From positions 1-64,000 of the IMG/VR virus record IMGVR_UViG_3300048008_000449: DNA of 64,000 nucleotides; one strand, 5' to 3'. Positions 3,477 through 21,457 of this stretch are shown piece after piece. Within the stretch, counting starts at the first letter, position 1. The number at the start of each line of letters is the position of its first letter. The notes under the pieces are model-generated. The model was given only the letters and a program-made list of their open reading frames with translations, was not told where the DNA came from and did no database searches. Both the position numbers and the translations under genes were made by a program.

Positions 3477-4530
3477 TATAATGGAATGGCATAAAAATGT
3501 TACTTCATTGCAGTTTGACATTAGTAGTCATTGCAATGCACGTTGCGGTGCATGTGTAAGAAACAAAGATGGCGGGGAAACTGAATCAAATTTAGAACTA
3601 GCACATTTTGATTTTGACTTATGGAAACGTATAGCATATGAAGATACTAAACGTTGGTATATACATAGACTAAATCTAAATGGAAATTGGGGCGATCCAA
3701 TGATGCATCCAAAATTAGTAGAAATGATGGAAGTATGGTTAGATGCACACCCAAGAAGTACACCATCAATTGCAACAAATGGAAGTATGAGAGGACCAAA
3801 GTTTTGGCATGACTTAGCTAGTGTAATGCATCACTTTCCAAATCATAAAGTAGACTTCTCAATTGATGGAATGGGAGACACACATAGCATATATCGTAGA
3901 CGTACAGACTTTAATAAAATTTGTGAAAATGTAAAATCGTTTTCCGAAGCAGGCGGGCATGCTACAATACAATTTACAATGTTTGAACATAACGAACATC
4001 AGCATAAAGAAGTTGAAGATTTAGCAAGGTCGTTAGGAGCAATGCAACTTGTTAAACGTAGAAGTCATTCTTCAAATATGGTTATAAAAGATAAAGATGA
4101 AGAATATAAAATAACAGCAACTGAAGGTATTCCAGAAGAAAGAATAAAATTAAAAGATGATAGAATTGAAAGTACAAATCCACACAAAGTACATATATTA
4201 GAAGCAAGTGATATGTATGATACTTATTTGAACACTTCAGAAAAACAAAAAACAAAATGTCCTTGGTACAATGCACAAGAGATTCAAATTGATCCTTGGG
4301 GTACAGTTTGGCCATGTTGTCATGTTAGTCTATTTGGAGTTCATTTAGAAAAGCATAATATTGCTAATGAAGTAGATGAAACATTTGTACAGGCTAGAAA
4401 AGATAATAATTTAAAAGATAGTTCTTTGTATGATATATTAAAGTCTGATTGGTATAACGAACATGTTAAGTTAAGCGTCAAAGGCGCAAAATGGAAAACA
4501 TGTCAACGAACATGTGGAGTTGAAGCATAA
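3469..4530 (+). CDS. Radical SAM protein with C-terminal SPASM/Twitch domain
   Basis: CNARCGAC, NGNWGDPM in place of GGEP, ATNG, FSIDG; C-terminal C..PCC..C...C. Confidence 0.92.
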   Translation: MADIMEWHKNVTSLQFDISSHCNARCGACVRNKDGGETESNLELAHFDFDLWKRIAYEDTKRWYIHRLNLNGNWGDPMMHPKLVEMMEVWLDAHPRSTPSIATNGSMRGPKFWHDLASVMHHFPNHKVDFSIDGMGDTHSIYRRRTDFNKICENVKSFSEAGGHATIQFTMFEHNEHQHKEVEDLARSLGAMQLVKRRSHSSNMVIKDKDEEYKITATEGIPEERIKLKDDRIESTNPHKVHILEASDMYDTYLNTSEKQKTKCPWYNAQEIQIDPWGTVWPCCHVSLFGVHLEKHNIANEVDETFVQARKDNNLKDSSLYDILKSDWYNEHVKLSVKGAKWKTCQRTCGVEA

Positions 4531-5780
4531 TGTATAAAAATCCTATGTTAGATGATCATAGATTCCCTACATGTTTAGCACCATGGAACGCATTAACTAT
4601 TAAGTGGGGCGGTGCAGTATTGCCTGACATTATTTACAATGGCAAGTTTGGAAACATTACAAGACAAACATTACCAGAGATATTAAACAGTGAAGAAGCA
4701 GTAGCATTGCGTAAGTCGCATGCAAGTAGAATAGTTCCAGAAGCATGTTTAGCATGTACCAAAAAAGAACAAAGCGGTAAAAGTCGTAGAATGTATTTTT
4801 GGGATAAACTTGATGTCGATGTTAAAAAAGGAAGTATTAAGAACACAGCAAACAGTAAGCCTGACATACGTTATTTAGATTTTACAATCAGTAATAAATG
4901 TAATTTAGCATGCATACATTGTAATCCTTTTGTAAGTACAGGGTGGACCAAAGATGGAAAGAAACTAAACAAAGAAAAGCCAGACTATTGGAAACAAGCA
5001 CAAATAGGATATCACGGTGTAGAAGATATGACATTCCTTGATAACTTGTTTGCTGATCCAGACTATTTTCGTAACCTACAGTGGGTAGCATTAAGAGGCG
5101 GAGAGCCATTGTATGATGAGAGTTGTAAAGCAATATTACAGTGGTTTATTGATCAAGGACTAGCAAAGAATATTATGCTAGACATTAGTACAAATGCTAC
5201 AGTTTTCGATGATGACTTTCAGGAGATATTTAAACACTTTAAGCATATTGAATTGCTTATCAGTATTGAAGCAGTAGATGAATTATACAGTGTAGTACGA
5301 GGAGGATCGTATACATTTAAAGAATTAGAAGAAAACATAGAAAAGTTTTATACATATCCTAACATTGAAGTTGTGTTTGCAGTAACAGTTATGTTAACAA
5401 ACGTATTTGGGTTAGACAAAGTATGGGACTGGTTTAAAGAAAAACACATGCATAGAGCAAGTATAAGCATGAGTAATGTTGTAGTTAATCCTACATATTT
5501 AAATATTGCATACATGCCAGATGTGTTAAAATATATTATGTATGATAAGCTATTGTCTATTCCAGATCAAAGCATTTGGCCTAAAGGCAGTTATCATGTA
5601 GACGAAATACATTACCAAACTGGAATACATGCTATCAGAGATGGATTACAAGTTGAGGTAAACGAAAAAGAACAAGAAAAGCAATGGGATTGGTTTGTCA
5701 AGTATACAAAAGACTTAGACAGATTACGTGGAACAAACACGTTTGAATTAATAAAGGAGTTAAAATTATATGAACAGTAA
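4530..5780 (+). CDS. Radical SAM protein with N-terminal SPASM/Twitch-like domain
   Basis: N-terminal CLAPWNAL..CLAC; CNLACIHC; GGEP; STNA; SIEA..YSVVRG. Confidence 0.93.
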   Translation: MYKNPMLDDHRFPTCLAPWNALTIKWGGAVLPDIIYNGKFGNITRQTLPEILNSEEAVALRKSHASRIVPEACLACTKKEQSGKSRRMYFWDKLDVDVKKGSIKNTANSKPDIRYLDFTISNKCNLACIHCNPFVSTGWTKDGKKLNKEKPDYWKQAQIGYHGVEDMTFLDNLFADPDYFRNLQWVALRGGEPLYDESCKAILQWFIDQGLAKNIMLDISTNATVFDDDFQEIFKHFKHIELLISIEAVDELYSVVRGGSYTFKELEENIEKFYTYPNIEVVFAVTVMLTNVFGLDKVWDWFKEKHMHRASISMSNVVVNPTYLNIAYMPDVLKYIMYDKLLSIPDQSIWPKGSYHVDEIHYQTGIHAIRDGLQVEVNEKEQEKQWDWFVKYTKDLDRLRGTNTFELIKELKLYEQ

Positions 5781-6708
5781 CCCAGATTTTGGTACCAGTG
5801 GCAACAGCGTCTGGAATCAACAATATTTTGATTTTTTAAATGAAACATTCTTTCCTAAAATTGATATCACTACAATTGCTGATGAATCAAATATTATGCT
5901 TGATAGATATCAAGGATGGATAGAAAGTAGTACATTAAATAAATTTAAAGGACTAGACGCATTTCCAATGCGTTATGCAAGCGTTGGTACTACGCAAGCG
6001 TTAGATTGGTGGCATTATTATTGTGCAGTTAACAACATGGATCTAAAAATGTTTAGAGGAGAGTACCCATATCATAGAGATGCATACTTACAAACTCATT
6101 TGGGTTGGGATGATTGTATTGAAGATTGTGGATTAATTGCAGGTGATGCAGTTGTAGTAAGTGTTCCATTTAGTGCAACAGGCAGACTTCCAATACAATG
6201 GGAAGACTTAATGAAAACATGTAACAGACTAAAGATTCCAGTGTTTGTTGATTGTGCATGGTTTGGAACTTGCTTTGGTATTACTGTTAACTTAGATGAA
6301 CCATGTATTAAAATGGTTGCATTTAGTACAACAAAAGGACTTAGTTGTGGTAACTGGCGTGCAGGTATTGTGTTTAGTAAAGTAAACGAAAAAGACTTTA
6401 AACGTGCTACTGATGGTAGCTTAGAAACACAAACAGATTGGAATCATGGTAATCATCTTAATACTGCTATTGCTAACAGATTAATGGCAGAGTTTTCACC
6501 AGATACTATTCCTAAAAAATATATGGCATCGCACATGGCAGTATGTAAACATTATGGATTAATTCCTACACAAACTGTACATATTGCAGAAGGTGCTCGT
6601 GGAACTGAATGGGACGTATTTCATAGAGATGAAACATACAATAGAATTAATATTTCAAAAGCATTGAAGCGACACAAGAACAAGGGAAACTTTTATGACA
6701 ACATATGA
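5770..6708 (+). CDS. PLP-dependent transferase (fold-type I, aminotransferase-like)
   Basis: VFVDCAWFG (DxA aromatic) and FSTTKGLSCGNWRAG (S.SK..G.R.G PLP-lysine motif). Confidence 0.75.
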   Translation: MNSNPDFGTSGNSVWNQQYFDFLNETFFPKIDITTIADESNIMLDRYQGWIESSTLNKFKGLDAFPMRYASVGTTQALDWWHYYCAVNNMDLKMFRGEYPYHRDAYLQTHLGWDDCIEDCGLIAGDAVVVSVPFSATGRLPIQWEDLMKTCNRLKIPVFVDCAWFGTCFGITVNLDEPCIKMVAFSTTKGLSCGNWRAGIVFSKVNEKDFKRATDGSLETQTDWNHGNHLNTAIANRLMAEFSPDTIPKKYMASHMAVCKHYGLIPTQTVHIAEGARGTEWDVFHRDETYNRINISKALKRHKNKGNFYDNI

Positions 6709-7147
6709 TGATCCTATTAACATAACAACTAAAGGACAATATCCAATTAGAGCCCATATGGTATTTAATAACATGGGTCCAGAAAACTGTGAAGATATCC
6801 TTTGGCAGAATGTAATAGATTCAACAAGTAATCTTGAAGGAAACGAAATAGGTGTAAGTGTAACACAGAGTTATCAATATACAAAGTTAAATGACGATCC
6901 AACTATTATGGTTAGATGGCAAGGTATTAAGACTACAAATGGTAATGAATTTAGAATTGGTCTAGGAAAAGGAATACCAGCAGATAAAAGAACACCACCT
7001 ATAATGTCTGGCAATATGAAAACCGGAGTGCAAGTCAATAGTACACTATCTATACAATCAGTAAAACTAGGTTGTGTAAATGGAGAGTTTGCAATTGAAA
7101 AAGATGGCAAATGGTATGCTATTCAAATAGGAGAAGCTATTGAATAA
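6695..7147 (+). CDS. Hypothetical beta-rich protein with no enzyme motif recognised
   Basis: 150-aa ORF overlapping both neighbours; no motif recognised. Confidence 0.7.
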   Translation: MTTYDDPINITTKGQYPIRAHMVFNNMGPENCEDILWQNVIDSTSNLEGNEIGVSVTQSYQYTKLNDDPTIMVRWQGIKTTNGNEFRIGLGKGIPADKRTPPIMSGNMKTGVQVNSTLSIQSVKLGCVNGEFAIEKDGKWYAIQIGEAIE

Positions 7148-8276
7148 ACTTCCTAGTAATGCTTGTGTGTATCCATTCAAAGCTGAAATGCTTATGCATG
7201 GACAACCTGCGACTCCTTGTTGTAGGTTTCATACTAGATTTTTAAAAGGAAAAGGTTTTAACGAAATACGTGAAACTATGATGCGTAATGAATGGCACCC
7301 AGGTTGTTATAAATGTAAATCAGATGAAGAAGTTAAAGGTAGCAGTATGAGAACTGAGGCTGACGAATTCTTTGATGACTTTACAGACACTGTACGTTTA
7401 GAGTACTTAGAAATAACAGTGGGTAGACTTTGCAATTTAGCATGTTTAAGTTGTGGAAGTGAATTCAGTCATACATGGGACAAAGACGAAATAGCATTGG
7501 GAATAAGTAGCGAAGACAAAATTAAAAAATTAAAAGAAGTACAAGAATATGATTTAGATAATTTAGATTTAAATAATTTAAAGCATGTTAAATTTATTAA
7601 AGTAACAGGTGGTGAACCATTTTTACACAAACAGTTTTTAAATCTTATAGTTAGGTTAGCGGACAGTGAACTAGCAGGACAAATTAGCTTAGAGATATTT
7701 ACAAATTGTACATGGTATCCAGCCAAACTTGAACTAGATGCATTAATGAAATTTAAACATATACAACTAAGTCCTAGCATAGATGGTGTAGGTAGTACAA
7801 ATGACTTACTACGTTACCCATCTAAGTGGGAAAAAATAGAAGCTACACTTGACAAGTGGATTGAACTTAGAGACGCTACAGGACGCTTAAATATAGCTAC
7901 AGCCACCACTGTAAGCGTTATTAACGCTCCACAGCTACATGAGTTTATACATTGGGCAAGAGTGCATAAAGGAATAGGAGTTATACTACAGACGGTATAT
8001 GAGCCACACTATATGAGTGTAGAGCATTGGCCAGATTGGTATAAACAAACATTAGATATGATTGTTGAACAGCAATTTTCAGGGTTCAACAAAAATGCAG
8101 GTAAATTTAAGACTGCATATAAACTTTTAAAGAAGCTATGCAAATCGCATAGTAAAAAAGACAATAGTATTATGTATAAGACAGAACTAAAACATATACT
8201 GAAACACCGAGGCCAAGACATTAGTATGGCACCAAAATTTAAGAATATATTAGAGTATCATGATAAACAAGGATAA
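7140..8276 (+). CDS. Radical SAM protein with N-terminal SPASM/Twitch-like domain
   Basis: ACVYPF..PCCRF..CYKC; CNLACLSC; TGGEPF; FTN; SIDG. Confidence 0.93.
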   Translation: MNKLPSNACVYPFKAEMLMHGQPATPCCRFHTRFLKGKGFNEIRETMMRNEWHPGCYKCKSDEEVKGSSMRTEADEFFDDFTDTVRLEYLEITVGRLCNLACLSCGSEFSHTWDKDEIALGISSEDKIKKLKEVQEYDLDNLDLNNLKHVKFIKVTGGEPFLHKQFLNLIVRLADSELAGQISLEIFTNCTWYPAKLELDALMKFKHIQLSPSIDGVGSTNDLLRYPSKWEKIEATLDKWIELRDATGRLNIATATTVSVINAPQLHEFIHWARVHKGIGVILQTVYEPHYMSVEHWPDWYKQTLDMIVEQQFSGFNKNAGKFKTAYKLLKKLCKSHSKKDNSIMYKTELKHILKHRGQDISMAPKFKNILEYHDKQG

Positions 8277-9519
8277 ACTAAAGAAAAGCAAAACATTCTG
8301 CATGCTACCGTTTATGCATATTTACGGAACAGCAGGCGGAGACATTGTGCCGTGTTGTGAGGCACAAGAAATCCCATTGAATAAACCAGGGGAGACAGCT
8401 CTTGAAAGCTGGAATAACGAAAACTATAAAGAGCTAAGACGGGCTTTGGCAGAGGACGAAAGACCAGAACGTTGTAATGTGTGCTGGCACTTAGAGGATA
8501 GCGGCATTGTAAGCAACCGTCAACAATGGGAAAAAGACAACTGGAAAGACTTCAGTGACAAAGTTAAAGTCAATGATGATTTCAGTGTTGATAATAAACC
8601 TATGTGGGTAGAACTTAAAGTAAGTAACTTTTGCAATTTAAAATGTATTATGTGCAGTACACATAGTAGTTATAAACGTGTAAAAGACTTAGATATTATT
8701 AAGAAGTATACAAAAGATGGCTACGAAACTAGACTTTTACGACCTACGGATTTATTCGCAAGTTTAAATGAATGGCCTGATCTATGGGATAATGTTCACA
8801 CACTACAATTTACAGGGGGTGAACCAATCATTAATCAAGAGCATTATGACTTACTAGAAGGAATACCCACAGAAGTTAAATCAAAAATTAAATTACGTTA
8901 TGCAACAAATATAAGTCATATTAAATTTAAAAAATACGACTTAGTTGAAATGTGGAGACAATTTAAACATGTTAACATTAAAGTAAGCATGGATGGCGTT
9001 GAAGAAGTATACAATTATATTAGACAAGATGGTGATTGGGATACAGTATATAACAATATGCTTGTTCTTAATGCAGAACCAACAATAGATCTTGCTGTTG
9101 GTATAACAGTGCAATCTCATAACATTTATCATATGCCAGAGTTTTATCAATTTTGGAAAGAAAGTCCAATTGAATTAAAGTTTATTACAGCCAACGTATT
9201 ACAAACGCCAAAGTATCTAAGACCAAACTTATGGCCTCAACCATATAGAACTAAAATAATTGATAGACTAAGAGAAGCATATGAATGGTATCCAGAAATG
9301 GAAAGGTTTATAACGTACATGGAAAATAATCCACCAGATGAATTAAACTATACCAAGATGAGAAAATATACTAGAGATCTTGAAAACAGGTATCCCAAAG
9401 ATACTACACTAAAGTCAATGATAAAAGATCATTTAGGAATAAAACTGGAAGGAATGGACGAGGTCGATCAGCGAGTGAAAGATCAAGAAGCAGCATTTTT
9501 TAAAGGATTCAAACGATGA
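8260..9519 (+). CDS. Radical SAM protein with N-terminal SPASM/Twitch-like domain
   Basis: FCMLPFMH..PCC..CNVC; CNLKCIMC; TGGEP; YATN; SMDG..YIR. Confidence 0.94.
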   Translation: MINKDKLKKSKTFCMLPFMHIYGTAGGDIVPCCEAQEIPLNKPGETALESWNNENYKELRRALAEDERPERCNVCWHLEDSGIVSNRQQWEKDNWKDFSDKVKVNDDFSVDNKPMWVELKVSNFCNLKCIMCSTHSSYKRVKDLDIIKKYTKDGYETRLLRPTDLFASLNEWPDLWDNVHTLQFTGGEPIINQEHYDLLEGIPTEVKSKIKLRYATNISHIKFKKYDLVEMWRQFKHVNIKVSMDGVEEVYNYIRQDGDWDTVYNNMLVLNAEPTIDLAVGITVQSHNIYHMPEFYQFWKESPIELKFITANVLQTPKYLRPNLWPQPYRTKIIDRLREAYEWYPEMERFITYMENNPPDELNYTKMRKYTRDLENRYPKDTTLKSMIKDHLGIKLEGMDEVDQRVKDQEAAFFKGFKR

Positions 9520-9656
9520 AAAATAAATTGCTAACAGAAATTAAAAATTTGGAACAAGTAATATATATTTCAGAACTAGAAAAAGTTTCAGATAAAACTA
9601 TGACTAACCTTAGAAATAAATTAACAAAATTACAAAAACAGGCAGAGAATGATTAA
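9516..9656 (+). CDS. 46-aa basic, coiled-coil-like small protein (absent from ORF track)
   Basis: MKNKLLTEIKNLEQVIYISELEKVSDKTMTNLRNKLTKLQKQAEND; fills the gap exactly, with an ATGA overlap upstream and an 8-nt overlap downstream. Confidence 0.6.
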   Translation: MKNKLLTEIKNLEQVIYISELEKVSDKTMTNLRNKLTKLQKQAEND

Positions 9657-14126: not shown

Positions 14127-15336
14127 AAAATTACCAAGTGATACATTTTGTGTATTACCATTCATGCATGCCGCGGTTAATCCTGGCGGCGGGTTTCGTG
14201 TTTGTTGTAACAGTAATCCTGCTAACAATAAAGTACTAAAGGATGATGGAAGTGGCAAAGCGTATAGAATATTTAAAGATGATATCAACGATGCATGGAA
14301 TAGTAAATGGTATAAAAATATTCGTAAGCAGTTTATTAACGGAGAACGTCCTGAAACATGTCAAAGATGTTTCCGTGAAGAAGATGCAGGCATAAGAAGT
14401 CCACGTACAGGATATAATGAAAAATGGTATAAAGATGATGTTAATGTAGCTGAAGAAATACCATTGGATATACGTTATGTAGATTTGCGTTTAGGTAATT
14501 TATGTAATTTAAAATGTAGAATGTGTAATCCATGGAGTAGTAGTATGTGGGTTAAAGACTGGAACAAAGTAACAGGACTTGCAGAACTTACACCAAACGA
14601 TCCATTAAGTGATGAAGAACTAGATTATATGGAAGTTATGAAAGTATGGCCTGATCGTAAACAAACAGGATTAAACTTTGTAGAGATTGCAGGAACTATT
14701 GAAGAAATTTATTTAACAGGCGGTGAACCTACGTTAGCAACAAGTCAATATGCATTATTTGATTATTGTATTGAAAACGATTTAGCAAGTGGTATTAAAT
14801 TAAAGTATAACACAAACTTAACAAATATACCACAAAAGATGATTGACTATTGGAGTCACTTCAAAGGTGTACAACTTAATACAAGTATTGACGCAACAGG
14901 TGACAGAGATAGATATGTTAGATATCCAAGTAGTTGGCCAAAAATAGAACAAACATTTGACAAGCTGTTAGCATTACCAAATGTAGCAATTCAGGTACAT
15001 TGTACAGTACAAGTATTAAATATGTGTGCTATGAGTGAATTGTTTGATTGGACTAGAAGTAAAGGCATACCTGACAAAGACATATATTTAAATATTCTTA
15101 ATCATCCAGAAATGTACAACATTCGTACATTACCTAAAGAATTAAAACAACTAGCAGAACAGCGTTTACAACCATATTTAGACATACCAAAAGTAGCAGA
15201 TACAATTAAGTATATGTGGGCTGAGGATTGGCACGAAAAACGTTGGAAGGAATTTGTTGATTTTAATATGAAAACAGATGAATTACAAAAAGGTGACTTA
15301 CTAACAGTAGCCCCAGAATTTAAGAATTTTGTTTAG
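14119..15336 (+). CDS. Radical SAM protein with N-terminal SPASM/Twitch-like domain
   Basis: FCVLPFMH..RVCC..CQRC; CNLKCRMC; TGGEP; YNTN; SID..YVRYPS.W; start set at ATG 14119. Confidence 0.94.
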   Translation: MSKKLPSDTFCVLPFMHAAVNPGGGFRVCCNSNPANNKVLKDDGSGKAYRIFKDDINDAWNSKWYKNIRKQFINGERPETCQRCFREEDAGIRSPRTGYNEKWYKDDVNVAEEIPLDIRYVDLRLGNLCNLKCRMCNPWSSSMWVKDWNKVTGLAELTPNDPLSDEELDYMEVMKVWPDRKQTGLNFVEIAGTIEEIYLTGGEPTLATSQYALFDYCIENDLASGIKLKYNTNLTNIPQKMIDYWSHFKGVQLNTSIDATGDRDRYVRYPSSWPKIEQTFDKLLALPNVAIQVHCTVQVLNMCAMSELFDWTRSKGIPDKDIYLNILNHPEMYNIRTLPKELKQLAEQRLQPYLDIPKVADTIKYMWAEDWHEKRWKEFVDFNMKTDELQKGDLLTVAPEFKNFV

Positions 15337-15338
15337 CC

Positions 15339-15369: not shown

Positions 15370-16035
15370 ATGGATAAATGGAGTGATATAATTTCTGCGA
15401 GAAGTACAACCTTTAGTTGGACTGATGAATTAATACCAAAAGAAGTAATACAAGAAGTATGTGAGGAAGTACATTTATTTTGCCCTAGTAAAAATAGAAA
15501 GATACCTTACATTGTAAACGTAATTAGAAATACAGATTACGATCAGCGTAAAGCCCTACACACAGGCTGTCATAGAAATACTGATCGTACTATAGAAGAA
15601 GACGGTGGTAACCCACAAGTGCTTGCTCCAACATTATTGGTGTTTAGTAAGCGTGACGTAACTGAAGCTGAAACAAAGTTTCAAACTATAGAAAAAAGAG
15701 TTGAAGATGGCATTGCTAATACAGATAACATTGAAATTGGTATGGCAGCATTATCATTCTTATACGGCTTAACATCAAGAGGATGGGATACAGGTTTGTG
15801 TCAGTGTGTTAGAAGTCGTAGTGGAACAGCAAGATTACTTGGAACCAACGGCTCTACTGATTTAATTATTGGTGTAGGTAAACGTAACACAGTAGATTCA
15901 GAAACAGGTGAAACAACAACTTGGCCTAAGTATATGGATCCACGTAACGATAAGCATCGTAAAATTCCATACCCATATGGAATTAGTCCTTATCCTAAAC
16001 CAAACTTTGACGATATATATAAAATAGAATTTTAA
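15370..16035 (+). CDS. Nitroreductase-family flavoprotein
   Basis: IISARSTTFSW, CPSKNRKIPY, DNIEIGMAA..LTSRGWDTGLCQC fit the nitroreductase R.S / PS..N.QP / D.GI..G..TC pattern. Confidence 0.75.
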   Translation: MDKWSDIISARSTTFSWTDELIPKEVIQEVCEEVHLFCPSKNRKIPYIVNVIRNTDYDQRKALHTGCHRNTDRTIEEDGGNPQVLAPTLLVFSKRDVTEAETKFQTIEKRVEDGIANTDNIEIGMAALSFLYGLTSRGWDTGLCQCVRSRSGTARLLGTNGSTDLIIGVGKRNTVDSETGETTTWPKYMDPRNDKHRKIPYPYGISPYPKPNFDDIYKIEF

Positions 16036-16048
16036 GTAAGTGAGATAA

Positions 16049-16612
16049 ATGAAAATAATCGCAACCGGTAATCCAGAATTTGGTGTTGCAAAAGCAATTG
16101 CTGAACGGTTTCCTGAAACAACCTTTGTCAATAGAACTGACTGGGGATATGATTTATGTCAAGATTCATATAAAAAGAAACTAGCAGAAAAGGCTCTTAA
16201 TTATGACGTCTTTATTAACTGTTCCGCACTATGGCAGTATCATCAAACTATGCTACTAGATGTAGTCTACAAAAATGCTTTAAAGAACCTTAAACGACTA
16301 CATATCGTGTCTTTGGGTAGTACAACTGACAGAGCCACCAAAGGTAGCGACTGGCATTATCAACAAGAAAAGAAGGCATTGCGTAGTACAAGCAATGCAT
16401 TGGGCTTAAAAAGCATATGGGCTGGTGGACCAAAAGTAAGTTATGTTACATTTGGAACACTGGAAAATAATGCACATAAGCATCCAGGAAGAACAGTAAT
16501 GAAACTAAACGAAGCCGTAGATATGATAGAATATGTAATTAATATGCCTTATCATTTAAACGTTAACGAACTAAGCATTGACCCAATGCAAACGGATTGG
16601 CCAAATGAATAA
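16049..16612 (+). CDS. Short-chain dehydrogenase/reductase (SDR)
   Basis: KIIATGNPEFGVAKAI Rossmann motif, INCS, SLGS, YQQEK (YxxxK). Confidence 0.8.
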   Translation: MKIIATGNPEFGVAKAIAERFPETTFVNRTDWGYDLCQDSYKKKLAEKALNYDVFINCSALWQYHQTMLLDVVYKNALKNLKRLHIVSLGSTTDRATKGSDWHYQQEKKALRSTSNALGLKSIWAGGPKVSYVTFGTLENNAHKHPGRTVMKLNEAVDMIEYVINMPYHLNVNELSIDPMQTDWPNE

Positions 16613-17780
16613 ATTTTGCTACATGCCTTGGCATGCAATCACGTTGAGTGCAAATGGTGATATTAAGCCATGCTGTCAATTTAGTAATAAAGGTCGTTTA
16701 CCTAATACACAACATGAAACTATTATGGAAAACTTTAATAGTGAACGTATGCAAGAACTACGTAAAGACTTTCTAAAAGGTGTACAACCTAGTGCTTGCA
16801 ATAGTTGTTGGGAGAGAGAAGATTTAGTAGGACAAAGTAGACGCCTGTGGTTTAATAAAAAGTTTATGAAGTTTGATGCTGATTTTATAAATGGCAATAC
16901 ACCTGATACATATGATGTACCAAATCCAAAGTTCTATCAAGCAGATATTAACTTATCAAATGTGTGTAATTTAAAATGCCGTATGTGTGGAAGTTGGGCA
17001 AGTAACAGTTGGTTCGAAGAAGAAATAGCGTTAGCTAAAATAGACAAGCGTTATGAAAAGAATGAAAGAGCAGTTCCATTACAACAATATGGATTAGAAG
17101 ACTTACGCAATATGCTACCTCATTTAAAAGATGTAAAGCGTATAGACTTTAAAGGCGGAGAGCCTATGATGGCTAAACATCATAATCAATTCTTACAATG
17201 GTTGATTGATGAAGATATGACTAACATTGAATTATTTTACACAACAAACGGAACAGTACAAAATCCTAAAATACTGAACTTGTTAAAACAGTTTAAACGT
17301 GTTAGTATATGTTTTAGTATAGAAGGTACTGGAGAACTATATAGATATATTAGAGGTGGCAAATACGAACTAGAAGATTTTGAATTCACACTATCAGAAT
17401 ATGATAAGTTACCAAATGTACAAATTATGTTTAATGTAACATTACAAAATTATAATGTATTTAACTTACCAGACTTGCATTTTTTCTTGCATGAAATGGA
17501 AGATAAATACGAGAGAGTAAGTGCTAACAGTAGTTTCACTACTATCTGTAACAAACCAGCATATTTAAGTCCAATGAACTTGCCAGATGATTTACGAGAT
17601 AAAGCAATTAAAAACTTATCCTTGTTTGAAGATTTTGACAAGTTAGTTGAGAGTATGAAAGCTAGAACATTTAATCCTGAACTATGGGATACATTTATTA
17701 ACTTTACAAACGACTTAGATAAAATGCGAGGAGATAGTGTAGTTAAAGCTGTACCTCAACTAAAGGAATATTTTAAATGA
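16605..17780 (+). CDS. Radical SAM protein with N-terminal SPASM/Twitch-like domain
   Basis: FCYMPWH..KPCC..CNSC; CNLKCRMC; GGEP; TTNG; SIEG..YIRG; start set at ATG 16605. Confidence 0.94.
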   Translation: MNKFCYMPWHAITLSANGDIKPCCQFSNKGRLPNTQHETIMENFNSERMQELRKDFLKGVQPSACNSCWEREDLVGQSRRLWFNKKFMKFDADFINGNTPDTYDVPNPKFYQADINLSNVCNLKCRMCGSWASNSWFEEEIALAKIDKRYEKNERAVPLQQYGLEDLRNMLPHLKDVKRIDFKGGEPMMAKHHNQFLQWLIDEDMTNIELFYTTNGTVQNPKILNLLKQFKRVSICFSIEGTGELYRYIRGGKYELEDFEFTLSEYDKLPNVQIMFNVTLQNYNVFNLPDLHFFLHEMEDKYERVSANSSFTTICNKPAYLSPMNLPDDLRDKAIKNLSLFEDFDKLVESMKARTFNPELWDTFINFTNDLDKMRGDSVVKAVPQLKEYFK

Positions 17781-18499
17781 GAAAACTTGTAGGTATTGAA
17801 GATAATCATGCACCTAAGGATGAGTTACTACGAGTAGAATGGAATTTAGGAAAACGTTGTAATTACAATTGTAGTTACTGTGGTAACGAACTACATAATA
17901 AAACAAGCGAGCATATGCCTTGGGAAGTTTATACTAATACAATAGATAAAATTGTAGAAGCAGCAATGGGCAAAAAGATTAAAATTAGTTTTACAGGCGG
18001 TGAGCCATTTGTACATCCAAAGTTTATTGATATGTTAAAGTATGCTAAAGAAAATGGTGTATATAGATGTAGTGTTACAACAAACGGAAGTCCACCACCT
18101 AAGATATATAAGAAAGCATTGCCATATTTACATTATGTTGTAATCAGTTATCATTTTGAATTTGCATATCATGAGAAAGTTATTAATAACATTACAGGTA
18201 TGTGGAAAGAGATACAAGAATATAGAGCTAAAGATGATTACAAAGGCATGCATGTTCATATTATGGCTTTACCAGGACACTTGCCACAATGGAAAGAAAT
18301 CATAGACGAATTAAAAGAATGTGGAGTTGAGTATACTATAAGAAAAATTAGACCACGTGTTAACATGGATCGTACAGGTTGGAATAAACCATATGCTGAC
18401 GGTATGTTAGGGCAACATCCTAAACACGAAGAAACAGAAAAGTTTGCAGGACAATATTATAGTAATGAAGAAGAGGAGTGGTTAAAAGTAAATGCCTGA
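17777..18499 (+). CDS. Radical SAM protein, core only (paralog of the N-terminal part of 23454-24629)
   Basis: VEWNLGKRCNYNCSYC, SFTGGEPF.HP, TTNG, SYHFE. Confidence 0.92.
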   Translation: MRKLVGIEDNHAPKDELLRVEWNLGKRCNYNCSYCGNELHNKTSEHMPWEVYTNTIDKIVEAAMGKKIKISFTGGEPFVHPKFIDMLKYAKENGVYRCSVTTNGSPPPKIYKKALPYLHYVVISYHFEFAYHEKVINNITGMWKEIQEYRAKDDYKGMHVHIMALPGHLPQWKEIIDELKECGVEYTIRKIRPRVNMDRTGWNKPYADGMLGQHPKHEETEKFAGQYYSNEEEEWLKVNA

Positions 18500-19799
18500 T
18501 ACTAATTATCATAGAGACATATACACCAGAAAACGAAAAGTTAAAGAATGGATGGCTGAACCTGGAAATAATTTTTGTGCATTGCCGTTTATTCATATGG
18601 CAATTGAAGCAGATGGGCAGGTAAGACCTTGTTGTATGGGAGATCCTTTTGACAATATTAATGTTTCAGGCGGTACAATAGAGAGTGCATATAATCACCC
18701 TGAAAGACAAGAATTTGTACAAGCATTTAAAGACAACAAACAACATCCAAAGTGTAATGTATGTTGGAATGCATCATATAGTATACGTAGTAGATATTCA
18801 TCAAATGACATGTCTATAAAATTTACTGAATCAGTAATGGAAGGCAATACCCCAGAAGCATCATTAAAATGGTTAGAAATTAAACCCGGAAACAGATGTA
18901 ATTTAAAATGTAGAATATGTGGGATACACAATAGCAGTACATGGACAAAAGATCATCATATTCTAAAAGAACACAAGAGCGTAAAATTTAAAGATTCATT
19001 TGCATTTAAATATACACAAAAATGTAATTGGGTCGATGATCCTAACTTCTGGAATGATATAAATCAGTTAGATGAAATACAAGATTTACACTTTATGGGT
19101 GGTGAACCTTTTATGGTATTAGAGCATTTTCAGTTACTTGAGAAATTAGTAGCTAGTCGAGATTGTAGTGATATCACTATTAGATATAATACAAATGGTA
19201 CTTATTATCCAACAGCAGAACAATGGAAATTGTATGAGAATTTTAGACAAGTAAAATTTCAAGTAAGTATTGATGATGTTGGTCCAAGATTTGAGTACGC
19301 TCGTAAAGAAGCAAAGTGGGATCTAGTAAAAGAAAATCTAAGAAAGTTTAGAGAAGCAAAACTATTATGCGAAGTTAAAGCAAAAAATGATCCCATCAAT
19401 TATCCAGTAACAAAAGTTAGAGCAAATTTAGACCCAACAGTAAGTATGTTTAATATATTTTACTTAGATGTTATTGAAGAAGAATTTAATAACATGGGTT
19501 GGCCTTTGGGAAGTCATGCAGATCATTATGTCTATAATGGACCAAATAATATAAGAAACTTGCCAGATGAATATAAACATATAATAACTGAAAAATATAA
19601 AGACACTAAAAGTACTTGGATACCAATGGCAGTAGATTATATGTGGACAGCCAAAAGTGATTATGAACAGTGGATGATGTTTGTAAAACAGACTAAAGAA
19701 ACAGACACAGTAAGAAATGAAAGTTTTAGTGATGTATATCCTGAATTTTATAATCTTATAAAAAGTGAATATGATAGGTATGAACCAATAGATGAATAA
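18492..19799 (+). CDS. Radical SAM protein with N-terminal SPASM/Twitch-like domain
   Basis: FCALPFIH..VRPCC..CNVC; CNLKCRIC; GGEPF; YNTNG; SIDD..FEYAR. Confidence 0.94.
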   Translation: MPDTNYHRDIYTRKRKVKEWMAEPGNNFCALPFIHMAIEADGQVRPCCMGDPFDNINVSGGTIESAYNHPERQEFVQAFKDNKQHPKCNVCWNASYSIRSRYSSNDMSIKFTESVMEGNTPEASLKWLEIKPGNRCNLKCRICGIHNSSTWTKDHHILKEHKSVKFKDSFAFKYTQKCNWVDDPNFWNDINQLDEIQDLHFMGGEPFMVLEHFQLLEKLVASRDCSDITIRYNTNGTYYPTAEQWKLYENFRQVKFQVSIDDVGPRFEYARKEAKWDLVKENLRKFREAKLLCEVKAKNDPINYPVTKVRANLDPTVSMFNIFYLDVIEEEFNNMGWPLGSHADHYVYNGPNNIRNLPDEYKHIITEKYKDTKSTWIPMAVDYMWTAKSDYEQWMMFVKQTKETDTVRNESFSDVYPEFYNLIKSEYDRYEPIDE

Positions 19800-20157
19800 T
19801 TTTAAAAATATAATAACACATTACAGTGATGGTACAAGTGAAGAAGATAATGTAAATAATGTAATGGCACGAGATGAAAATGATTTCCGTGGTTGGGAAT
19901 GTTGGGCTGGTGTACAAAATATTACAATAAGCAATACAGGTGATGTGTATAGAGCAATATGCAAAGTAGGAGGCAAACTAGGAAACATATATGATGGATT
20001 TGAAATGCCACTTGAAACAATTATTTGTAACAAGCCTAGATGTATATGTGCCGCTGATGTACAACTATCAAAAGCACAACCAGAGCATGTTACAAAATTA
20101 AGAGTAGGAAAAGATTGGATGGACGATGTTTATAGTTCGGGTATAAAAGATGAGTAA
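19792..20157 (+). CDS. Stand-alone SPASM-like domain protein
   Basis: FRGWECWAG..G.VYR..C..LGNI..GF..C...C.C.AD.Q.SK matches the C-terminus of 23454-24629 (FEGWECSSG..C..LGNI.TGF..C...C.SSADSKIPK). Confidence 0.82.
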   Translation: MNNFKNIITHYSDGTSEEDNVNNVMARDENDFRGWECWAGVQNITISNTGDVYRAICKVGGKLGNIYDGFEMPLETIICNKPRCICAADVQLSKAQPEHVTKLRVGKDWMDDVYSSGIKDE

Positions 20158-21457
20158 ACAAAGCAATTATGAAAAGTTCTACGAGAACGCTATAGGAAAA
20201 ATTGGCAAACTGCCAGTGGATAAAGAATCATTTTGTCCATTGCCATTTGTACATGTAAGCACTATGCCGCATGGAGAAGTTAAACTATGTTGTAGAGCAC
20301 AACCACCAAAGAATGGAAAAAATCCAAATGTTAAAGATGAAGATTTTAATCTAAAAGATTATTGGCACAGTGAGTATATGAATGAGATACGAGATTCCTT
20401 AATCACAGGTGAGAAACATCATCAGTGTAAAAATTGTTGGAAGATGGAAGATAATAACATTGTTAGTTTACGTATGAATAGATTAACAGATTTAATGGAA
20501 ACTCCATCAACCAGAAATGCAGTTGAAAAATATTTAGTAGATAGAGAAGTAGATTTTAAAATTCCACTGATAGAACTTAAACTAAGCAACGTATGTAATT
20601 TTAAATGTCGTATGTGTTGGCCAAAAGACAGTTCAAAGTGGATGCAAGATTGGGATAAAGTAAAACAATTCTATAATAAAAATGACAGAGAATATGTAGA
20701 TGAAATTGTAGACAGTAATGATTTACGTAAATCTAGAGTAATGAACTTGTATGAAAAAGATGAACATTTTGTTCCACAATTATTAGAAGTAATGGAAACT
20801 GTAGAAGAGATTGAATTTGCAGGCGGTGAGCCACTTATGGATCCTATTCATTATCGTGTATTAGACAGTATTCCACATCCAGAAAACGTTACATTAAAAT
20901 ACAGTACAAACCTAAGTATTATGAAAATGGGTAAACATAGTGTTATTGACTTATGGAAAAAATTTAAAAGCATTAAACTAACAATCAGTATTGATGGACA
21001 CAAAGAGCTTAATGCTAAAATAAGAAGAGGGTCTGATTGGGAACTATTAAAAAGTAACATTAACTTAGTTAAGAAAGAATTAACTAATATTGATGTTATC
21101 AAAGGAACTACATGTATTAGCGGAATGAATGCAAAAGAACTAGGCGAAACAGCTGAAGCTATTGTATTCGAATTAGGTATACACTGGCATACAAGCCGTG
21201 TACAATGGCCTGATTTCTTACATGCTAACGTATTACGCCCAACGGAGCTTCAAGGTGGAATAGACGGCTTAAAACGGGTATTTGATAGCTTAAACCTACC
21301 AGAAAGACGTATGGTAGGTAGACGCTTTATGTTTGAAACACATTTAAATGGTGCTATGCATTGGCTACAATCTTGTATTGACAATAACAAGCACGAAGAA
21401 AAATACGAAGCATTTTGTAAGTTTAATCAGACAATTACGGACATTGATGATGACTAA
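20150..21457 (+). CDS. Radical SAM protein with N-terminal SPASM/Twitch-like domain
   Basis: FCPLPFVH..KLCC..CKNC; CNFKCRMC; AGGEP; YSTN; SIDG. Confidence 0.94.
   Translation: MSKQSNYEKFYENAIGKIGKLPVDKESFCPLPFVHVSTMPHGEVKLCCRAQPPKNGKNPNVKDEDFNLKDYWHSEYMNEIRDSLITGEKHHQCKNCWKMEDNNIVSLRMNRLTDLMETPSTRNAVEKYLVDREVDFKIPLIELKLSNVCNFKCRMCWPKDSSKWMQDWDKVKQFYNKNDREYVDEIVDSNDLRKSRVMNLYEKDEHFVPQLLEVMETVEEIEFAGGEPLMDPIHYRVLDSIPHPENVTLKYSTNLSIMKMGKHSVIDLWKKFKSIKLTISIDGHKELNAKIRRGSDWELLKSNINLVKKELTNIDVIKGTTCISGMNAKELGETAEAIVFELGIHWHTSRVQWPDFLHANVLRPTELQGGIDGLKRVFDSLNLPERRMVGRRFMFETHLNGAMHWLQSCIDNNKHEEKYEAFCKFNQTITDIDDD

What the first reader, a model, noticed from the sequence alone, without database searches (positions are those of the whole stretch)
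4530..21457. Expansion of a reversed-architecture (Twitch-first) rSAM family: nine diverged copies in 64 kb
Seen: eight copies here (4530, 7140, 8260, 13074, 14119, 16605, 18492, 20150) plus 54405 share an N-terminal C..P(F/W).H..(P/V/L)CC..CxxC block (the first copy has lost the CC pair) ahead of the CNL.C..C core, then SS.W and GGEP motifs. This is the reverse of the canonical core-then-SPASM order. The copies are strongly diverged, so this is not a recent amplification. Inference: each copy acts on a different position of a shared substrate, like an assembly line.
Basis: partly seen in the sequence, partly recalled or inferred. Interest (0 to 1): 0.62.

Follow-up and report, generated by a model that had tools for sequence, protein, structure and literature searches.

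The report
Radical-SAM tailoring island in a marine jumbo phage
A large uncultured marine phage carries a conserved operon packed with old, distinct versions of an already catalogued "iron-sulfur domain first" radical enzyme, set among sugar- and amine-modifying genes, and the same toolkit occurs in predatory Bdellovibrionota bacteria; what it makes is still unknown.

Summary
All nine flagged ORFs are full-length members of NCBIfam NF033640 (N_Twi_rSAM), scoring 196-381 bits against a cut-off of 170. The 205-kb phage record holds 13 such genes plus 6 other radical SAM genes. So the "reversed" order is already a curated family, but I found no paper on its function.

This is not an expansion within this phage:
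- The copies are 18-33% identical to each other.
- In a tree of 422 sequences, each falls in its own old subfamily, together with copies from other uncultured phages and from Bdellovibrionota.
- All eight clustered copies are under purifying selection (dN/dS 0.03-0.29 against a syntenic relative).

Arrays are normal for the family: up to 7 copies per 21 kb in IMG/VR loci, and 7-13 per genome in some Bdellovibrionota.

The copies sit in a 23.6-kb overlapping-gene operon with an amidinotransferase (HsvA/SxtG/StrB1 family), a PLP enzyme, an SDR, a cupin dioxygenase, two GT-A-plus-methyltransferase-like proteins and a highly conserved 391-aa radical SAM "anchor".

Best reading (moderate confidence): a modular tailoring pathway for a carbohydrate- or amine-type substrate, with each subfamily doing its own step. 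"One shared substrate" remains untested.

The parts
1059..1739 (+). Radical SAM core only (226 aa): first half of a split canonical rSAM-SPASM enzyme
   Evidence: CxxxCxxC at residue 30. Pfam Radical_SAM 27 bits. Clusters with the 3469-4530 family.
1726..2079 (+). Stand-alone SPASM-like Cys-rich protein (117 aa): second half of the split enzyme
   Evidence: Pfam SPASM 25.1 bits, E 2e-5. Overlaps the stop of the preceding core gene.
2072..3139 (+). Amidinotransferase
   Evidence: Sequence hits to solved structures: HsvA 4.9e-25, SxtG 7e-20, StrB1 inosamine-phosphate amidinotransferase 1.6e-16, and AGAT. Orthologs at about 350-378 bits in 6 viral and 4 Bdellovibrionota loci.
3123..3476 (+). Small hydrophobic protein (117 aa), function unknown
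   Evidence: ORF listed. No Pfam hit. No relatives in the fetched loci.
3469..4530 (+). Canonical-order radical SAM + C-terminal SPASM enzyme (353 aa)
   Evidence: Pfam Radical_SAM at residues 19-184 and SPASM at 264-349. This family is present in 65 of 80 viral and 33 of 76 bacterial N_Twi loci. Its C-terminal domain aligns with the N-terminal domain of the N_Twi family (hhalign probability 93.7%, E 1.8e-7).
4530..5780 (+). N_Twi radical SAM copy 1; Asp replaces the second cluster Cys
   Evidence: NF033640 254 bits. Cys pattern C-D-I-C-C. dN/dS 0.032 against L160. This subfamily is enriched next to amidinotransferase genes.
5770..6708 (+). PLP fold-type-I aminotransferase-like enzyme (312 aa)
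   Evidence: Pfam Aminotran_1_2 25 bits. Family alignment has invariant Asp, Ser, Lys and Arg. Weak profile hits to aminotransferases, E 0.005.
6695..7147 (+). Unknown 150-aa protein
   Evidence: No family hit. Conserved only in close syntenic relatives: 86% identity, dN/dS 0.17.
7140..8276 (+). N_Twi radical SAM copy 2
   Evidence: NF033640 219 bits. dN/dS 0.081.
8260..9519 (+). N_Twi radical SAM copy 3
   Evidence: NF033640 319 bits. dN/dS 0.154.
9516..9656 (+). Conserved 46-aa charged, Cys-free small ORF
   Evidence: Present and similar in L160 and called as a gene in L159-L161. No Pfam hit.
9649..10926 (+). Two-domain protein: GT-A glycosyltransferase-like N-terminus and class I methyltransferase-like C-terminus
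   Evidence: AF2 model pLDDT 82.8. VIA-align Z 8-9.7 to many GT-A enzymes over residues 14-200. Z 12.5 to Leptospira 6ulo and about 8 to CheR/PNMT/EgtD over residues 205-413. Fold-level evidence only.
10926..12326 (+). Paralog of the preceding GT-A/methyltransferase-like protein
   Evidence: Same cluster in the all-versus-all comparison. The phage record holds five paralogs.
12323..13096 (+). Cupin Fe(II)/2-oxoglutarate dioxygenase (Asp/Arg beta-hydroxylase family)
   Evidence: Pfam PF05118 44.7 bits. Partner in 20 viral and 5 bacterial loci.
13074..14126 (+). N_Twi radical SAM copy 4
   Evidence: NF033640 200 bits. dN/dS 0.071.
14119..15336 (+). N_Twi radical SAM copy 5 (best match to the family model)
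   Evidence: NF033640 381 bits. AF2 pLDDT 95, pTM 0.91. Core Z 13.2 to anSME, 12.9 to SkfB, 12.2 to BlsE. Orthologs at 50-92% identity in marine metagenomes. dN/dS 0.112.
15370..16035 (+). Nitroreductase-like protein (weak)
   Evidence: Pfam Nitroreductase 21.3 bits, below the 23.5 cut-off. Relatives in 9 viral loci in the all-versus-all clustering; the single-sequence phmmer search gave 7 viral and 1 bacterial locus.
16049..16612 (+). Short SDR-type dehydrogenase/reductase (187 aa)
   Evidence: Family profile hits SDRs in the PDB, best 3.9e-12. Gly-rich N-terminal motif and invariant Ser/Tyr/Lys. Partner in 23 viral and 5 bacterial loci.
16605..17780 (+). N_Twi radical SAM copy 6
   Evidence: NF033640 317 bits. 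dN/dS 0.039.
17777..18499 (+). N-terminal half (radical SAM core) of a split 391-aa-type enzyme
   Evidence: Aligns to residues 20-114 of 23454-24629, E 2e-17. Pfam Radical_SAM 64 bits. 97.9% identical in L160.
18492..19799 (+). N_Twi radical SAM copy 7, nested between the two halves of the split gene
   Evidence: NF033640 266 bits. dN/dS 0.285. Same nesting in L159-L161.
19792..20157 (+). C-terminal Cys-rich half of the split 391-aa-type enzyme
   Evidence: Aligns to residues 296-386 of 23454-24629, E 3e-11. The two halves are adjacent in L010/L061.
20150..21457 (+). N_Twi radical SAM copy 8
   Evidence: NF033640 302 bits. dN/dS 0.058. This subfamily lies next to the 391-aa type in 16 of 20 cases.
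21348..23464 (+). Two paralogous proteins of unknown function (382 and 323 aa)
   Evidence: They cluster together. The 382-aa protein has no Pfam, NCBIfam or PHROG hit; the 323-aa protein was scanned against Pfam only, with no hit.
23454..24629 (+). Highly conserved 391-aa radical SAM enzyme with a Cys-rich C-terminus ('anchor' of the island)
   Evidence: Pfam Radical_SAM 52.6 bits. Orthologs at 66-81% identity in at least 25 viral loci and 60-64% in at least 17 Bdellovibrionota loci. Weak similarity to the STM4011 family.
34574..34972 (-). A-type Fe-S cluster carrier (IscA/ATC-like); likely supports the many Fe-S enzymes
   Evidence: PF01521 42.7 bits. The same pairing of ATC with many radical SAM genes was noted in marine T4-like genomes (PMC5332604).
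54405..55709 (-). N_Twi radical SAM copy 9, outside the operon; its stop overlaps the start of the family-B DNA polymerase gene
   Evidence: NF033640 204 bits. Pfam Radical_SAM 54 bits. Neighbours are PolB at 51715-54408 and a DNA-methyltransferase-like gene at 55696-56808.

Best explanation
The window is the first 64 kb of a 205-kb fragment of an uncultured marine jumbo phage with a T4-type DNA polymerase.

Positions 1059-24629 form one plus-strand operon of 26 overlapping or closely abutting genes. It is a modular radical-SAM tailoring island.

Eight of its genes, plus a ninth at 54405 and four more downstream of the window, belong to NF033640 (N_Twi_rSAM). This family is a circularly permuted relative of canonical radical SAM-SPASM/Twitch enzymes. 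A BtrN-type Twitch domain comes first (Cys, Gly-x4-Cys, then CxxC, holding one auxiliary [4Fe-4S] cluster). The CxxxCxxC/GGE SAM-cleaving core follows.

Each copy represents a different old subfamily that is kept by selection. The copies are predicted to make a 5'-deoxyadenosyl radical, abstract a hydrogen atom from the substrate, and pass an electron to the auxiliary cluster.

Together with the partner enzymes listed in the parts (amidinotransferase, PLP enzyme, SDR, cupin dioxygenase, two GT-A/methyltransferase-like proteins, canonical rSAM-SPASM enzymes and the conserved 391-aa radical SAM anchor), they most likely carry out distinct redox, epimerisation or deoxygenation-type steps. The substrate is most likely a carbohydrate- or amine-type small molecule or glycan made during infection.

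What is shown: family membership, architecture, age of the paralogs, purifying selection, the conserved gene partners, and the shared toolkit with Bdellovibrionota.

What is inferred: the chemistry, the substrate class, and whether the steps act on one substrate.
For: Membership and architecture:
- NF033640 at 196-381 bits for all nine copies.
- Pfam SPASM lies N-terminal to Radical_SAM.
- The family profile's N-terminus matches the BtrN Twitch domain, residues 165-237, at E 3e-3.
- The N-terminal domain aligns to the C-terminal domain of the co-resident canonical family (hhalign 93.7%, E 1.8e-7). The cores align at 99.2%.
- Four cluster Cys are conserved; 368 of 422 sequences have all five.
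- The AF2 model is confident (pLDDT 95). Its core is nearest to anSME, SkfB and BlsE at Z 12-13.

Old, selected paralogs:
- 18-33% pairwise identity.
- Separate subfamily clades with support 0.80-0.99 for most copies, though only 0.37 for copy 7140.
- dN/dS 0.03-0.29.
- Identical gene order in L159-L161.

Small-molecule or glycan context:
- Amidinotransferase of the HsvA/SxtG/StrB1 family.
- SDR, PLP enzyme and cupin dioxygenase.
- GT-A plus methyltransferase folds.
- Related loci add carbamoyltransferase, B12-radical SAM, GT2 and GT1/28 genes.
- Subfamily-specific partners.

Literature:
- Radical SAM cassettes vary within the glycosyltransferase-rich host-recognition cluster of pelagimyophages (PMC7029224).
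- A T4-like marine genome with 12 radical SAM genes and an ATC gene has been described (PMC5332604). An ATC gene is present here.
Against: - No substrate, product or characterised family member was found. No paper on the N-terminal-Twitch family turned up.
- The GT-A and methyltransferase assignments rest on moderate fold scores (Z 8-12.5) with no sequence-family hit.
- The closest solved cores include peptide-modifying enzymes (anSME, SkfB, CteB) as well as sugar enzymes (BlsE), so fold does not pick the substrate class.
- No nucleotide-sugar activation genes were identified in the operon.
- One copy (54405) sits in the replication module beside a DNA-methyltransferase-like gene, which does not fit a single-pathway picture.
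- The Fisher tests for partner enrichment ignore shared ancestry.
- dS of 0.5-1.07 is near saturation.
Confidence: 0.45

Rival explanations
1. Peptide or protein maturases. The N_Twi enzymes, like most SPASM/Twitch enzymes, would install thioether, C-C, epimerisation or oxidation marks on a ribosomal peptide or a phage or host protein. The cupin Asp/Asn-hydroxylase-type enzyme and (in relatives) the B12-radical SAM enzymes would add further marks, as in proteusin-type RiPP clusters.
For: - The nearest solved cores are anSME, SkfB, CteB, SuiB and ChlB.
- PF05118 enzymes often hydroxylate proteins (function from general knowledge of the family).
- B12-radical SAM genes co-occur in relatives.
- A conserved 46-aa ORF (9516-9656) and a 150-aa orphan (6695-7147) lie inside the operon.
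- One hit lies in an Entotheonella MAG (L144).
Against: - No PqqD/RRE-type recognition domain appears in any Pfam or NCBIfam scan.
- The small ORF is charged, Cys-free and helical-looking, unlike typical cores.
- There is no protease/exporter pair.
- The amidinotransferase (polyamine, cyclitol or toxin-precursor family), SDR and GT-A-like genes point to non-peptide substrates.
Confidence: 0.2
2. Nucleic-acid hypermodification. The island would decorate phage DNA (or tRNA) bases with amino, guanidino or sugar groups to evade host nucleases. It would be comparable to thymidine or 7-deazaguanine hypermodification pathways, which use PLP, radical SAM and amidotransferase-type enzymes.
For: - Copy 9 is co-oriented and overlapping with the DNA polymerase gene, next to a DNA-methyltransferase-like gene.
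- QueC-like PP-loop proteins are frequent partners in relatives: 28 viral loci, weak Pfam QueC hit.
- PLP and amidino-transfer enzymes are present.
Against: - No hydroxymethylase, DNA glycosylase/DpdA-type transferase or base kinase was seen in the operon.
- The same toolkit sits in Bdellovibrionota chromosomes beside glycosyltransferase and methyltransferase genes.
- Thirteen radical enzymes far exceeds any known DNA-modification pathway (general knowledge).
Confidence: 0.1
3. Redundant or decaying paralogs. The array would be a by-product of cassette shuffling in a hypervariable region, with several copies no longer needed.
For: - Copy number varies from 1 to 7 per locus among relatives.
- Split genes are present.
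- Copy 1 lacks the CC pair.
Against: - All frames are intact with complete catalytic motifs.
- dN/dS is 0.03-0.29 for all eight.
- The Asp variant is conserved across its subfamily.
- The split halves are 90-98% identical between relatives.
Confidence: 0.03

Closest known systems
NCBIfam NF033640, N_Twi_rSAM (twitch domain-containing radical SAM protein)
   Same: All nine window copies, and 13 in the record, match end to end above the curated cut-off. The domain order and Cys motifs are the same.
   Different: Nothing structural. The family has no assigned reaction. What is added here is its subfamily structure, its array habit, its partner genes, and its distribution in uncultured phages and Bdellovibrionota.
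BtrN (butirosin 2-deoxy-scyllo-inosamine dehydrogenase), the founding Twitch enzyme
   Same: One auxiliary [4Fe-4S] site of the type Cys...Gly-x4-Cys...CxxC. The family profile's N-terminus aligns with BtrN residues 165-237. The gene context is aminoglycoside-like (amidinotransferase, PLP enzyme, SDR).
   Different: The Twitch domain is C-terminal in BtrN and N-terminal here. Similarity is weak (E 3e-3). These proteins also carry an extra C-terminal helical region of about 70 residues. Dehydrogenase activity is not shown.
anSME / SkfB / CteB / BlsE (SPASM and Twitch radical SAM enzymes with solved structures)
   Same: The radical SAM core superposes at Z 12-13 over about 210-220 residues. Profile E-values are 6e-11 to 2e-6.
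   Different: The order is permuted. There is only one auxiliary-cluster motif: the CxxCx5Cx3C block of SPASM is absent. Foldseek TM scores are only 0.3-0.5.
Radical SAM gene cassettes of marine T4-like phages (Nishimura 2017, PMC5332604; Zaragoza-Solas 2020, PMC7029224)
   Same: Many radical SAM genes in one T4-like marine phage genome, together with an A-type Fe-S carrier. The cassettes come and go in a hypervariable, glycosyltransferase-rich region.
   Different: Those papers did not resolve the family, the permuted architecture, the subfamilies or the Bdellovibrionota link. This phage is a larger, Atu_ph07/Rak2-like lineage by its polymerase.

Membership tests
NF033640 N_Twi_rSAM | Full-length HMM score above the curated cut-off of 170 bits | tested here: met
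   By hmmscan, the eight copies in the flagged region score 200-381 bits. By six-frame genome search, all nine window copies score 196-380 bits, and 13 copies in the record are above the cut-off.
NF033640 N_Twi_rSAM | Twitch/SPASM-type Cys-rich domain N-terminal to the radical SAM core | tested here: met
   Pfam SPASM at about residues 14-98 and Radical_SAM at about 93-340. BtrN Twitch match on profile positions 4-81. hhalign to the C-terminal domain of the canonical neighbours.
Radical SAM superfamily | CxxxCxxC cluster motif plus a GGE-type SAM-binding motif | tested here: met
   Invariant C137/C141/C144 and G209-G210-E211-P212 in all 13 copies. Actual SAM cleavage cannot be tested with these tools.
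Twitch subclass (one auxiliary cluster) | Cys...Gly-x4-Cys...CxxC and no second-cluster motif | tested here: met
   C19, G32, C37, C89 and C92 are conserved. 368 of 422 sequences have all five Cys. No CxxCx5Cx3C block is present. Cluster occupancy is inferred, not measured.
SPASM subclass (two auxiliary clusters) | Seven-Cys motif including CxxCx5Cx3C and a final Cys | tested here: not met
   Only CxxC is present after the gap in the alignments. Pfam SPASM matches because Twitch is the truncated form of that domain.
RiPP radical SAM maturases | RRE/PqqD-like leader-binding domain and an adjacent precursor peptide | tested here: inconclusive
   No PqqD/RRE hit appears in the Pfam or NCBIfam scans. 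The only small ORF (9516-9656) is Cys-free and charged. Leader-independent maturases cannot be excluded.
Aminoglycoside-type radical SAM dehydrogenases (BtrN-like) | Oxidation of a secondary alcohol of an amino-cyclitol or sugar, with electron exit through the Twitch cluster | not testable with these tools
   Only context supports this: amidinotransferase, SDR and PLP enzyme.

The most novel reading that the evidence does not exclude
The N_Twi arrays, the 391-aa anchor and their partner genes could form a mobile, combinatorial radical-SAM island exchanged between marine phages and predatory Bdellovibrionota. Each subfamily would perform a different, so far undescribed radical transformation on a sugar- or amine-based scaffold. 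The island would thus generate hypervariable surface glycans, or a guanidino-glycoside-like metabolite, used when attacking Gram-negative prey.
Probability: 0.25. Interest if true: 0.8.

Novelty: new member of a known kind. Interest (0 to 1): 0.5.

Why it matters
- Nineteen radical SAM genes in 205 kb is an unusually heavy investment in oxygen-sensitive Fe-S chemistry for a phage of the oxic ocean.
- The family has a curated model but no known reaction.
- The copies are old, selected subfamilies with fixed partner genes, and the same toolkit occurs in Bdellovibrionota. That turns a vague "many radical SAM AMGs" note into a defined, testable system.
- The system offers about a dozen subfamilies, a conserved anchor enzyme, and culturable entry points: Vibrio phages K566/K567, Ralstonia phage RsoM2USA and Bdellovibrionota.
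- If the products are surface glycans, this bears on how marine phages and their hosts vary their recognition structures.
- If the product is a metabolite, it would be a rare phage-borne biosynthetic pathway.
- The split and nested genes in the operon also suggest how a domain-order permutation could arise.

Tried and rejected
- **Near-DNA search of 4000-22000 against cultured phages:** no match.
- **tblastn of copy 5 against cultured phages:** only 7 records, at 21-25% identity, with 1-2 copies each. Isolates give no functional lead.
- **PHROGs:** only generic 'radical SAM domain-containing protein' families, and nothing for the partner genes.
- **Fold search of the N_Twi model:** no solved structure has the permuted order. 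Only core matches appear, at TM 0.3-0.5 and Z up to 13.
- **My guess that 21348-23464 encodes SGNH hydrolases:** no hit in the libraries scanned (Pfam, NCBIfam and PHROGs for the first gene; Pfam only for the second), so the guess is dropped.
- **Frequent partner family c3 (about 241 aa):** no Pfam hit and no PDB sequence hit with a profile.
- **Frequent partner family c4 (about 271 aa):** no Pfam hit.
- **T4 Gp23 family search of the record:** rang nowhere, including the controls, so it is uninformative.
- **First genome-contig scan with the 13-way alignment:** It was rerun with four sequences. The pattern used (CNLKC[RVI]MC) may bias the result towards some subfamilies and taxa.
- **The genome search centred on a locus:** Handles were used instead.
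- **Literature searches for the family itself:** nothing found.
- **Model coordinates:** not available in the Python box. Cluster-to-cluster distances and pocket comparisons could not be made.
- **Not used:** the reads tools and complex prediction.

Full report
**1. What the window is**

The window is the first 64 kb of an IMG/VR virus record of 204,772 bp. CheckV estimates it as 56% complete, and no end repeats were found. GC content is about 33%.

It encodes a family-B DNA polymerase at 51715-54408 (minus strand). The best cultured relatives of this polymerase are 44-48% identical. They come from jumbo myoviruses: Sinorhizobium phage Phosso, Agrobacterium phage Atu_ph07, and Rak2-like phages such as GAP32 and fHe-Yen9. 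An endolysin-like gene lies at 51078-51647.

No cultured phage shares near-identical DNA with the flagged region. The source is therefore an uncultured marine jumbo phage.

**2. Checking the observation**

Positions 1059-24629 carry one plus-strand train of 26 genes (counting the 46-aa ORF at 9516-9656). Their starts and stops mostly overlap. The eight flagged ORFs and the ninth at 54405-55709 (minus strand) are intact.

- Each matches NCBIfam NF033640, 'twitch domain-containing radical SAM protein' (N_Twi_rSAM), end to end. Scores are 196-381 bits against a curated cut-off of 170.
- Pfam places SPASM at about residues 14-98 and Radical_SAM behind it.
Invariant positions are the first Cys, CxxC, S.R, CN(L/F).C..C, a Ser, GGEP, TN, a Ser and an Arg.

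The count is an underestimate. The record holds 13 copies above the cut-off plus six other CxxxCxxC enzymes, so 19 radical SAM genes in 205 kb.

**3. The architecture is real but already catalogued**

A profile of 61 family members hits SkfB, anSME, BlsE, CteB, viperin and MoaA with its core. Its N-terminal positions 4-81 hit the C-terminal Twitch domain of BtrN, residues 165-237, at E 3e-3.

Profile-profile comparison supports a permutation:
- The N-terminal domain of the family aligns with the C-terminal Cys-rich domain of the canonical-order radical SAM-SPASM family that sits in the same islands (93.7% probability, E 1.8e-7, 67 columns).
- The two cores align at 99.2%.

The Cys pattern is the Twitch pattern: Cys...Gly-x4-Cys...CxxC, with no second-cluster block.
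- Of 422 sequences, 368 have all five N-terminal Cys.
- The second Cys of the 'CC' pair is freely replaced.
- The 4530 subfamily carries Asp instead of the first Cys of the pair. The 'lost CC' in copy 1 is therefore a conserved subfamily trait.

An AlphaFold model of copy 5 is very confident (pLDDT 95, pTM 0.91).
- Its core (residues about 115-370) superposes on anSME (Z 13.2), SkfB (12.9) and BlsE (12.2).
- No solved structure shows the permuted order; Foldseek TM scores are 0.3-0.5.

I found no paper on the family's function.

**4. Not an expansion in this phage**

Pairwise identity among the 13 copies is 18-33%. The exception is 45% for the tandem pair 95429/96714, outside the window.

In a maximum-likelihood tree of 422 family members (13 own, 240 viral, 169 bacterial), the copies are not monophyletic.
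- Apart from that tandem pair, and copy 13074 (whose nearest own-genome relative is copy 68222, in a clade of seven), each lies in its own subfamily clade with sequences from other viral contigs and often from bacteria.
- Support for these clades is 0.80-0.99 for most copies, but only 0.37 for copy 7140.

Copy 5 alone has more than a thousand relatives in marine metagenomes. Orthologs run from 50 to 92% identity, on contigs up to 174 kb. The nearest ESM Atlas clusters are 90-100% viral.

Three contigs (L159-L161, about 83% protein identity for copy 5) carry the same cluster in the same order. Nei-Gojobori dN/dS of the eight copies against L160 is 0.032, 0.081, 0.154, 0.071, 0.112, 0.039, 0.285 and 0.058, at dS 0.5-1.07. 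None is relaxed, although dS is near saturation.

The cluster is a mosaic.
- Relative L003 runs directly from the SDR gene to the 391-aa radical SAM gene. It lacks the whole block 16605-23464.
- L010 and L061 carry orthologs of that block's genes in another order.

**5. Arrays are the family's normal habit**

At least 590 IMG/VR stretches encode relatives. In the 80 fetched loci, the number of copies per roughly 21 kb was:

| Copies per locus | Number of loci |
|---|---|
| 7 | 2 |
| 6 | 10 |
| 5 | 6 |
| 4 | 13 |
| 3 | 15 |
| 2 | 25 |
| 1 | 11 |

(the count includes the two own-record loci L001 and L002, which hold the four copies beyond the window, so 82 loci are tallied)

Among bacterial genomes, a pattern-seeded scan returned 164 relatives. 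They are overwhelmingly from Bdellovibrionota MAGs, some on megabase contigs or whole chromosomes.
- Three such genomes hold 12, 13 and 7 copies, again clustered.
- One array lies beside EF-G, a methyltransferase and a GT1/28-type glycosyltransferase, so it is chromosomal.
- In a sample of 151 Bdellovibrionota species genomes, 31 had at least one copy and several had 9-11 or more.
- The seeding pattern may bias the taxonomic picture.

**6. The company the copies keep**

All-against-all clustering of ORFs from the 156 loci gives a recurrent toolkit:

| Partner family | Viral loci | Bacterial loci |
|---|---|---|
| Canonical radical SAM-SPASM | 65 | 33 |
| Second radical SAM type (window 23454-24629 and its split version) | 63 | 34 |
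| Unknown family, about 271 aa | 52 | 17 |
| Unknown family, about 241 aa | 43 | 14 |
| PP-loop/QueC-like | 28 | 2 |
| SDR | 23 | 5 |
| Cupin Asp/Arg-hydroxylase-type dioxygenase | 20 | 5 |
| 425/466-aa family | 18 | 7 |
| PLP aminotransferase-like | 12 | 10 |
| B12-radical SAM | 8 | 10 |
| Carbamoyltransferase | 6 | 5 |
| Amidinotransferase | 5 | 4 |

Details on individual partners:
- The amidinotransferase at 2072-3139 matches HsvA (4.9e-25), SxtG, StrB1 and AGAT.
- The 187-aa partner is an SDR: profile E 3.9e-12, with an invariant Ser/Tyr/Lys triad.
- The 425-aa protein was modelled at pLDDT 82.8. It has a GT-A-like N-terminal half (Z 8-9.7 to many glycosyltransferases, including viral ones). 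Its C-terminal half is class-I-methyltransferase-like (Z 12.5 to a Leptospira protein, about 8 to CheR, PNMT and EgtD). This is fold-level evidence only.
- The 391-aa radical SAM enzyme is far more conserved than the N_Twi genes. It is 66-81% identical in at least 25 viral loci and 60-64% in at least 17 Bdellovibrionota loci. I call it the anchor of the island.

Subfamilies have preferred neighbours (not corrected for shared ancestry):
- The Asp-variant 4530 type sits next to an amidinotransferase in 6 of 14 cases against 11 of 408 elsewhere (Fisher 4e-6).
- The 20150 type sits next to the 391-aa type in 16 of 20 cases against 162 of 402 (7e-4).

The window also encodes an A-type Fe-S carrier at 34574-34972. 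This echoes the ATC-plus-12-radical-SAM T4-like genome noted by Nishimura et al. (PMC5332604).

**7. How it most likely works**

Shown:
- The copies are intact.
- They carry the full SAM-cluster and GGE motifs and a four-ligand Twitch site.
- They are under selection.
- They are co-transcribed, judging from the overlapping gene ends, with amine-, redox- and probably glycosyl/methyl-transfer enzymes.

Inferred:
- Each enzyme cleaves SAM to a 5'-deoxyadenosyl radical, abstracts a hydrogen from its substrate, and uses the Twitch cluster as electron sink or substrate anchor. Twitch enzymes on sugars and nucleotides are thought to work this way (BtrN, BlsE, MoaA; general knowledge of those families).
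- The context (amidinotransferase, PLP enzyme, SDR, dioxygenase, GT-A/methyltransferase folds, and carbamoyltransferase and glycosyltransferases in relatives) points to a carbohydrate- or amine-type small molecule or glycan.
- Such radical SAM cassettes also sit in the glycosyltransferase-rich hypervariable region of marine T4-like phages, which fits the same substrate class.

I put this at about 0.45. However, the variable copy sets fit a tailoring toolbox at least as well, and no substrate is known.

**8. Rivals**

- **Peptide or protein maturation (0.2).** It is favoured by the nearest solved cores and the protein-hydroxylase-type cupin. It is weakened by the absence of an RRE, of a plausible precursor and of a protease/exporter pair.
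- **Nucleic-acid hypermodification (0.1).** It is suggested by copy 9 overlapping the polymerase gene beside a DNA-methyltransferase-like gene, and by QueC-like partners. No base-activating or transfer enzymes were seen.
- **Decay or redundancy (0.03).** It is contradicted by the dN/dS values and the intact motifs.

**9. Side observation on the origin of the permutation**

The operon holds a canonical radical SAM-SPASM gene (3469-4530). It also holds a split one: core at 1059-1739, SPASM-like protein at 1726-2079.

A third case is a split 391-aa-type gene. Its halves, 17777-18499 and 19792-20157, align to residues 20-114 and 296-386 of 23454-24629. An N_Twi gene is nested between the halves, and another follows directly.

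A Cys-rich C-terminal piece lying just upstream of the next radical SAM core is the arrangement from which a fusion would give a Twitch-first protein. This is conjecture.

**10. Verdict**

- The architecture is a known curated family.
- 'Expansion' should be replaced by 'assemblage of old subfamilies in a mobile tailoring island'.
- The assembly-line idea is plausible but unproven.
- Novelty: a new member of a known kind, with an unknown reaction and a phage-Bdellovibrionota link on which my searches found no paper.
- Interest: 0.5.

Noticed in passing
window 17777-20157: A radical SAM gene of the 391-aa type is split into a core half (17777-18499) and a Cys-rich C-terminal half (19792-20157). 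An N_Twi gene (18492-19799) is nested between them. The nesting is conserved in L159-L161, but the halves are adjacent in L010/L061.
   Followed up: yes
window 1059-2079: A canonical radical SAM-SPASM enzyme is split into two overlapping genes: a core of 226 aa and a SPASM-like protein of 117 aa.
   Followed up: partly
window 23454-24629: The 391-aa radical SAM enzyme is unusually conserved: 66-81% identity across many viral loci and 60-64% to Bdellovibrionota. That is much higher than for the N_Twi genes beside it. Its function is unknown, with only weak similarity to the STM4011 family.
   Followed up: partly
window 9516-9656 (+): A conserved 46-aa charged, Cys-free ORF lies in the only sizeable intergenic gap of the operon. 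It is also called as a gene in the syntenic contigs.
   Followed up: partly
window 34574-34972 (-): An A-type Fe-S cluster carrier (IscA/ATC-like, PF01521) is present, as reported for other radical-SAM-rich marine T4-like genomes.
   Followed up: partly
window 39564-42523 (-): Two TauD/TfdA-type dioxygenases (39564-40313 and 40857-41798) and a fatty-acid-desaturase-like membrane protein (41801-42523) form a further oxidative gene group outside the operon.
   Followed up: no
window 54405-56808 (-): N_Twi copy 9 overlaps the start of the DNA polymerase gene by 4 bases. A gene with weak DNA-methyltransferase similarity precedes it. This copy may serve a different process from the operon copies.
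   Followed up: partly
G000:C1 67027-69400 and 95429-97949 (beyond the window): Four more N_Twi genes lie here in two tandem pairs. The second pair is 45% identical, the only sign of a comparatively recent duplication. Locus L065 is nearly identical to the first pair.
   Followed up: partly
L010:3007-5556 and L061:3001-5553: An open frame of about 850 aa scores 570-580 bits against the N_Twi model. It appears to be two N_Twi units fused in one protein.
   Followed up: no
L083 (Crocinitomicaceae MAG) and L084 (Gammaproteobacteria MED685 MAG): These 'bacterial' contigs carry N_Twi copy-5 orthologs at 47-49% identity and 391-aa anchor orthologs at about 75%. That is as close as the phage contigs, and their GC is 35%. 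They are probably phage contigs binned into MAGs.
   Followed up: no
window 9649-12326; G000:C1 102094-103452 and 172503-175413: The GT-A/methyltransferase-like family has five paralogs in the record. It is a second expanded family that travels with the radical SAM arrays.
   Followed up: partly
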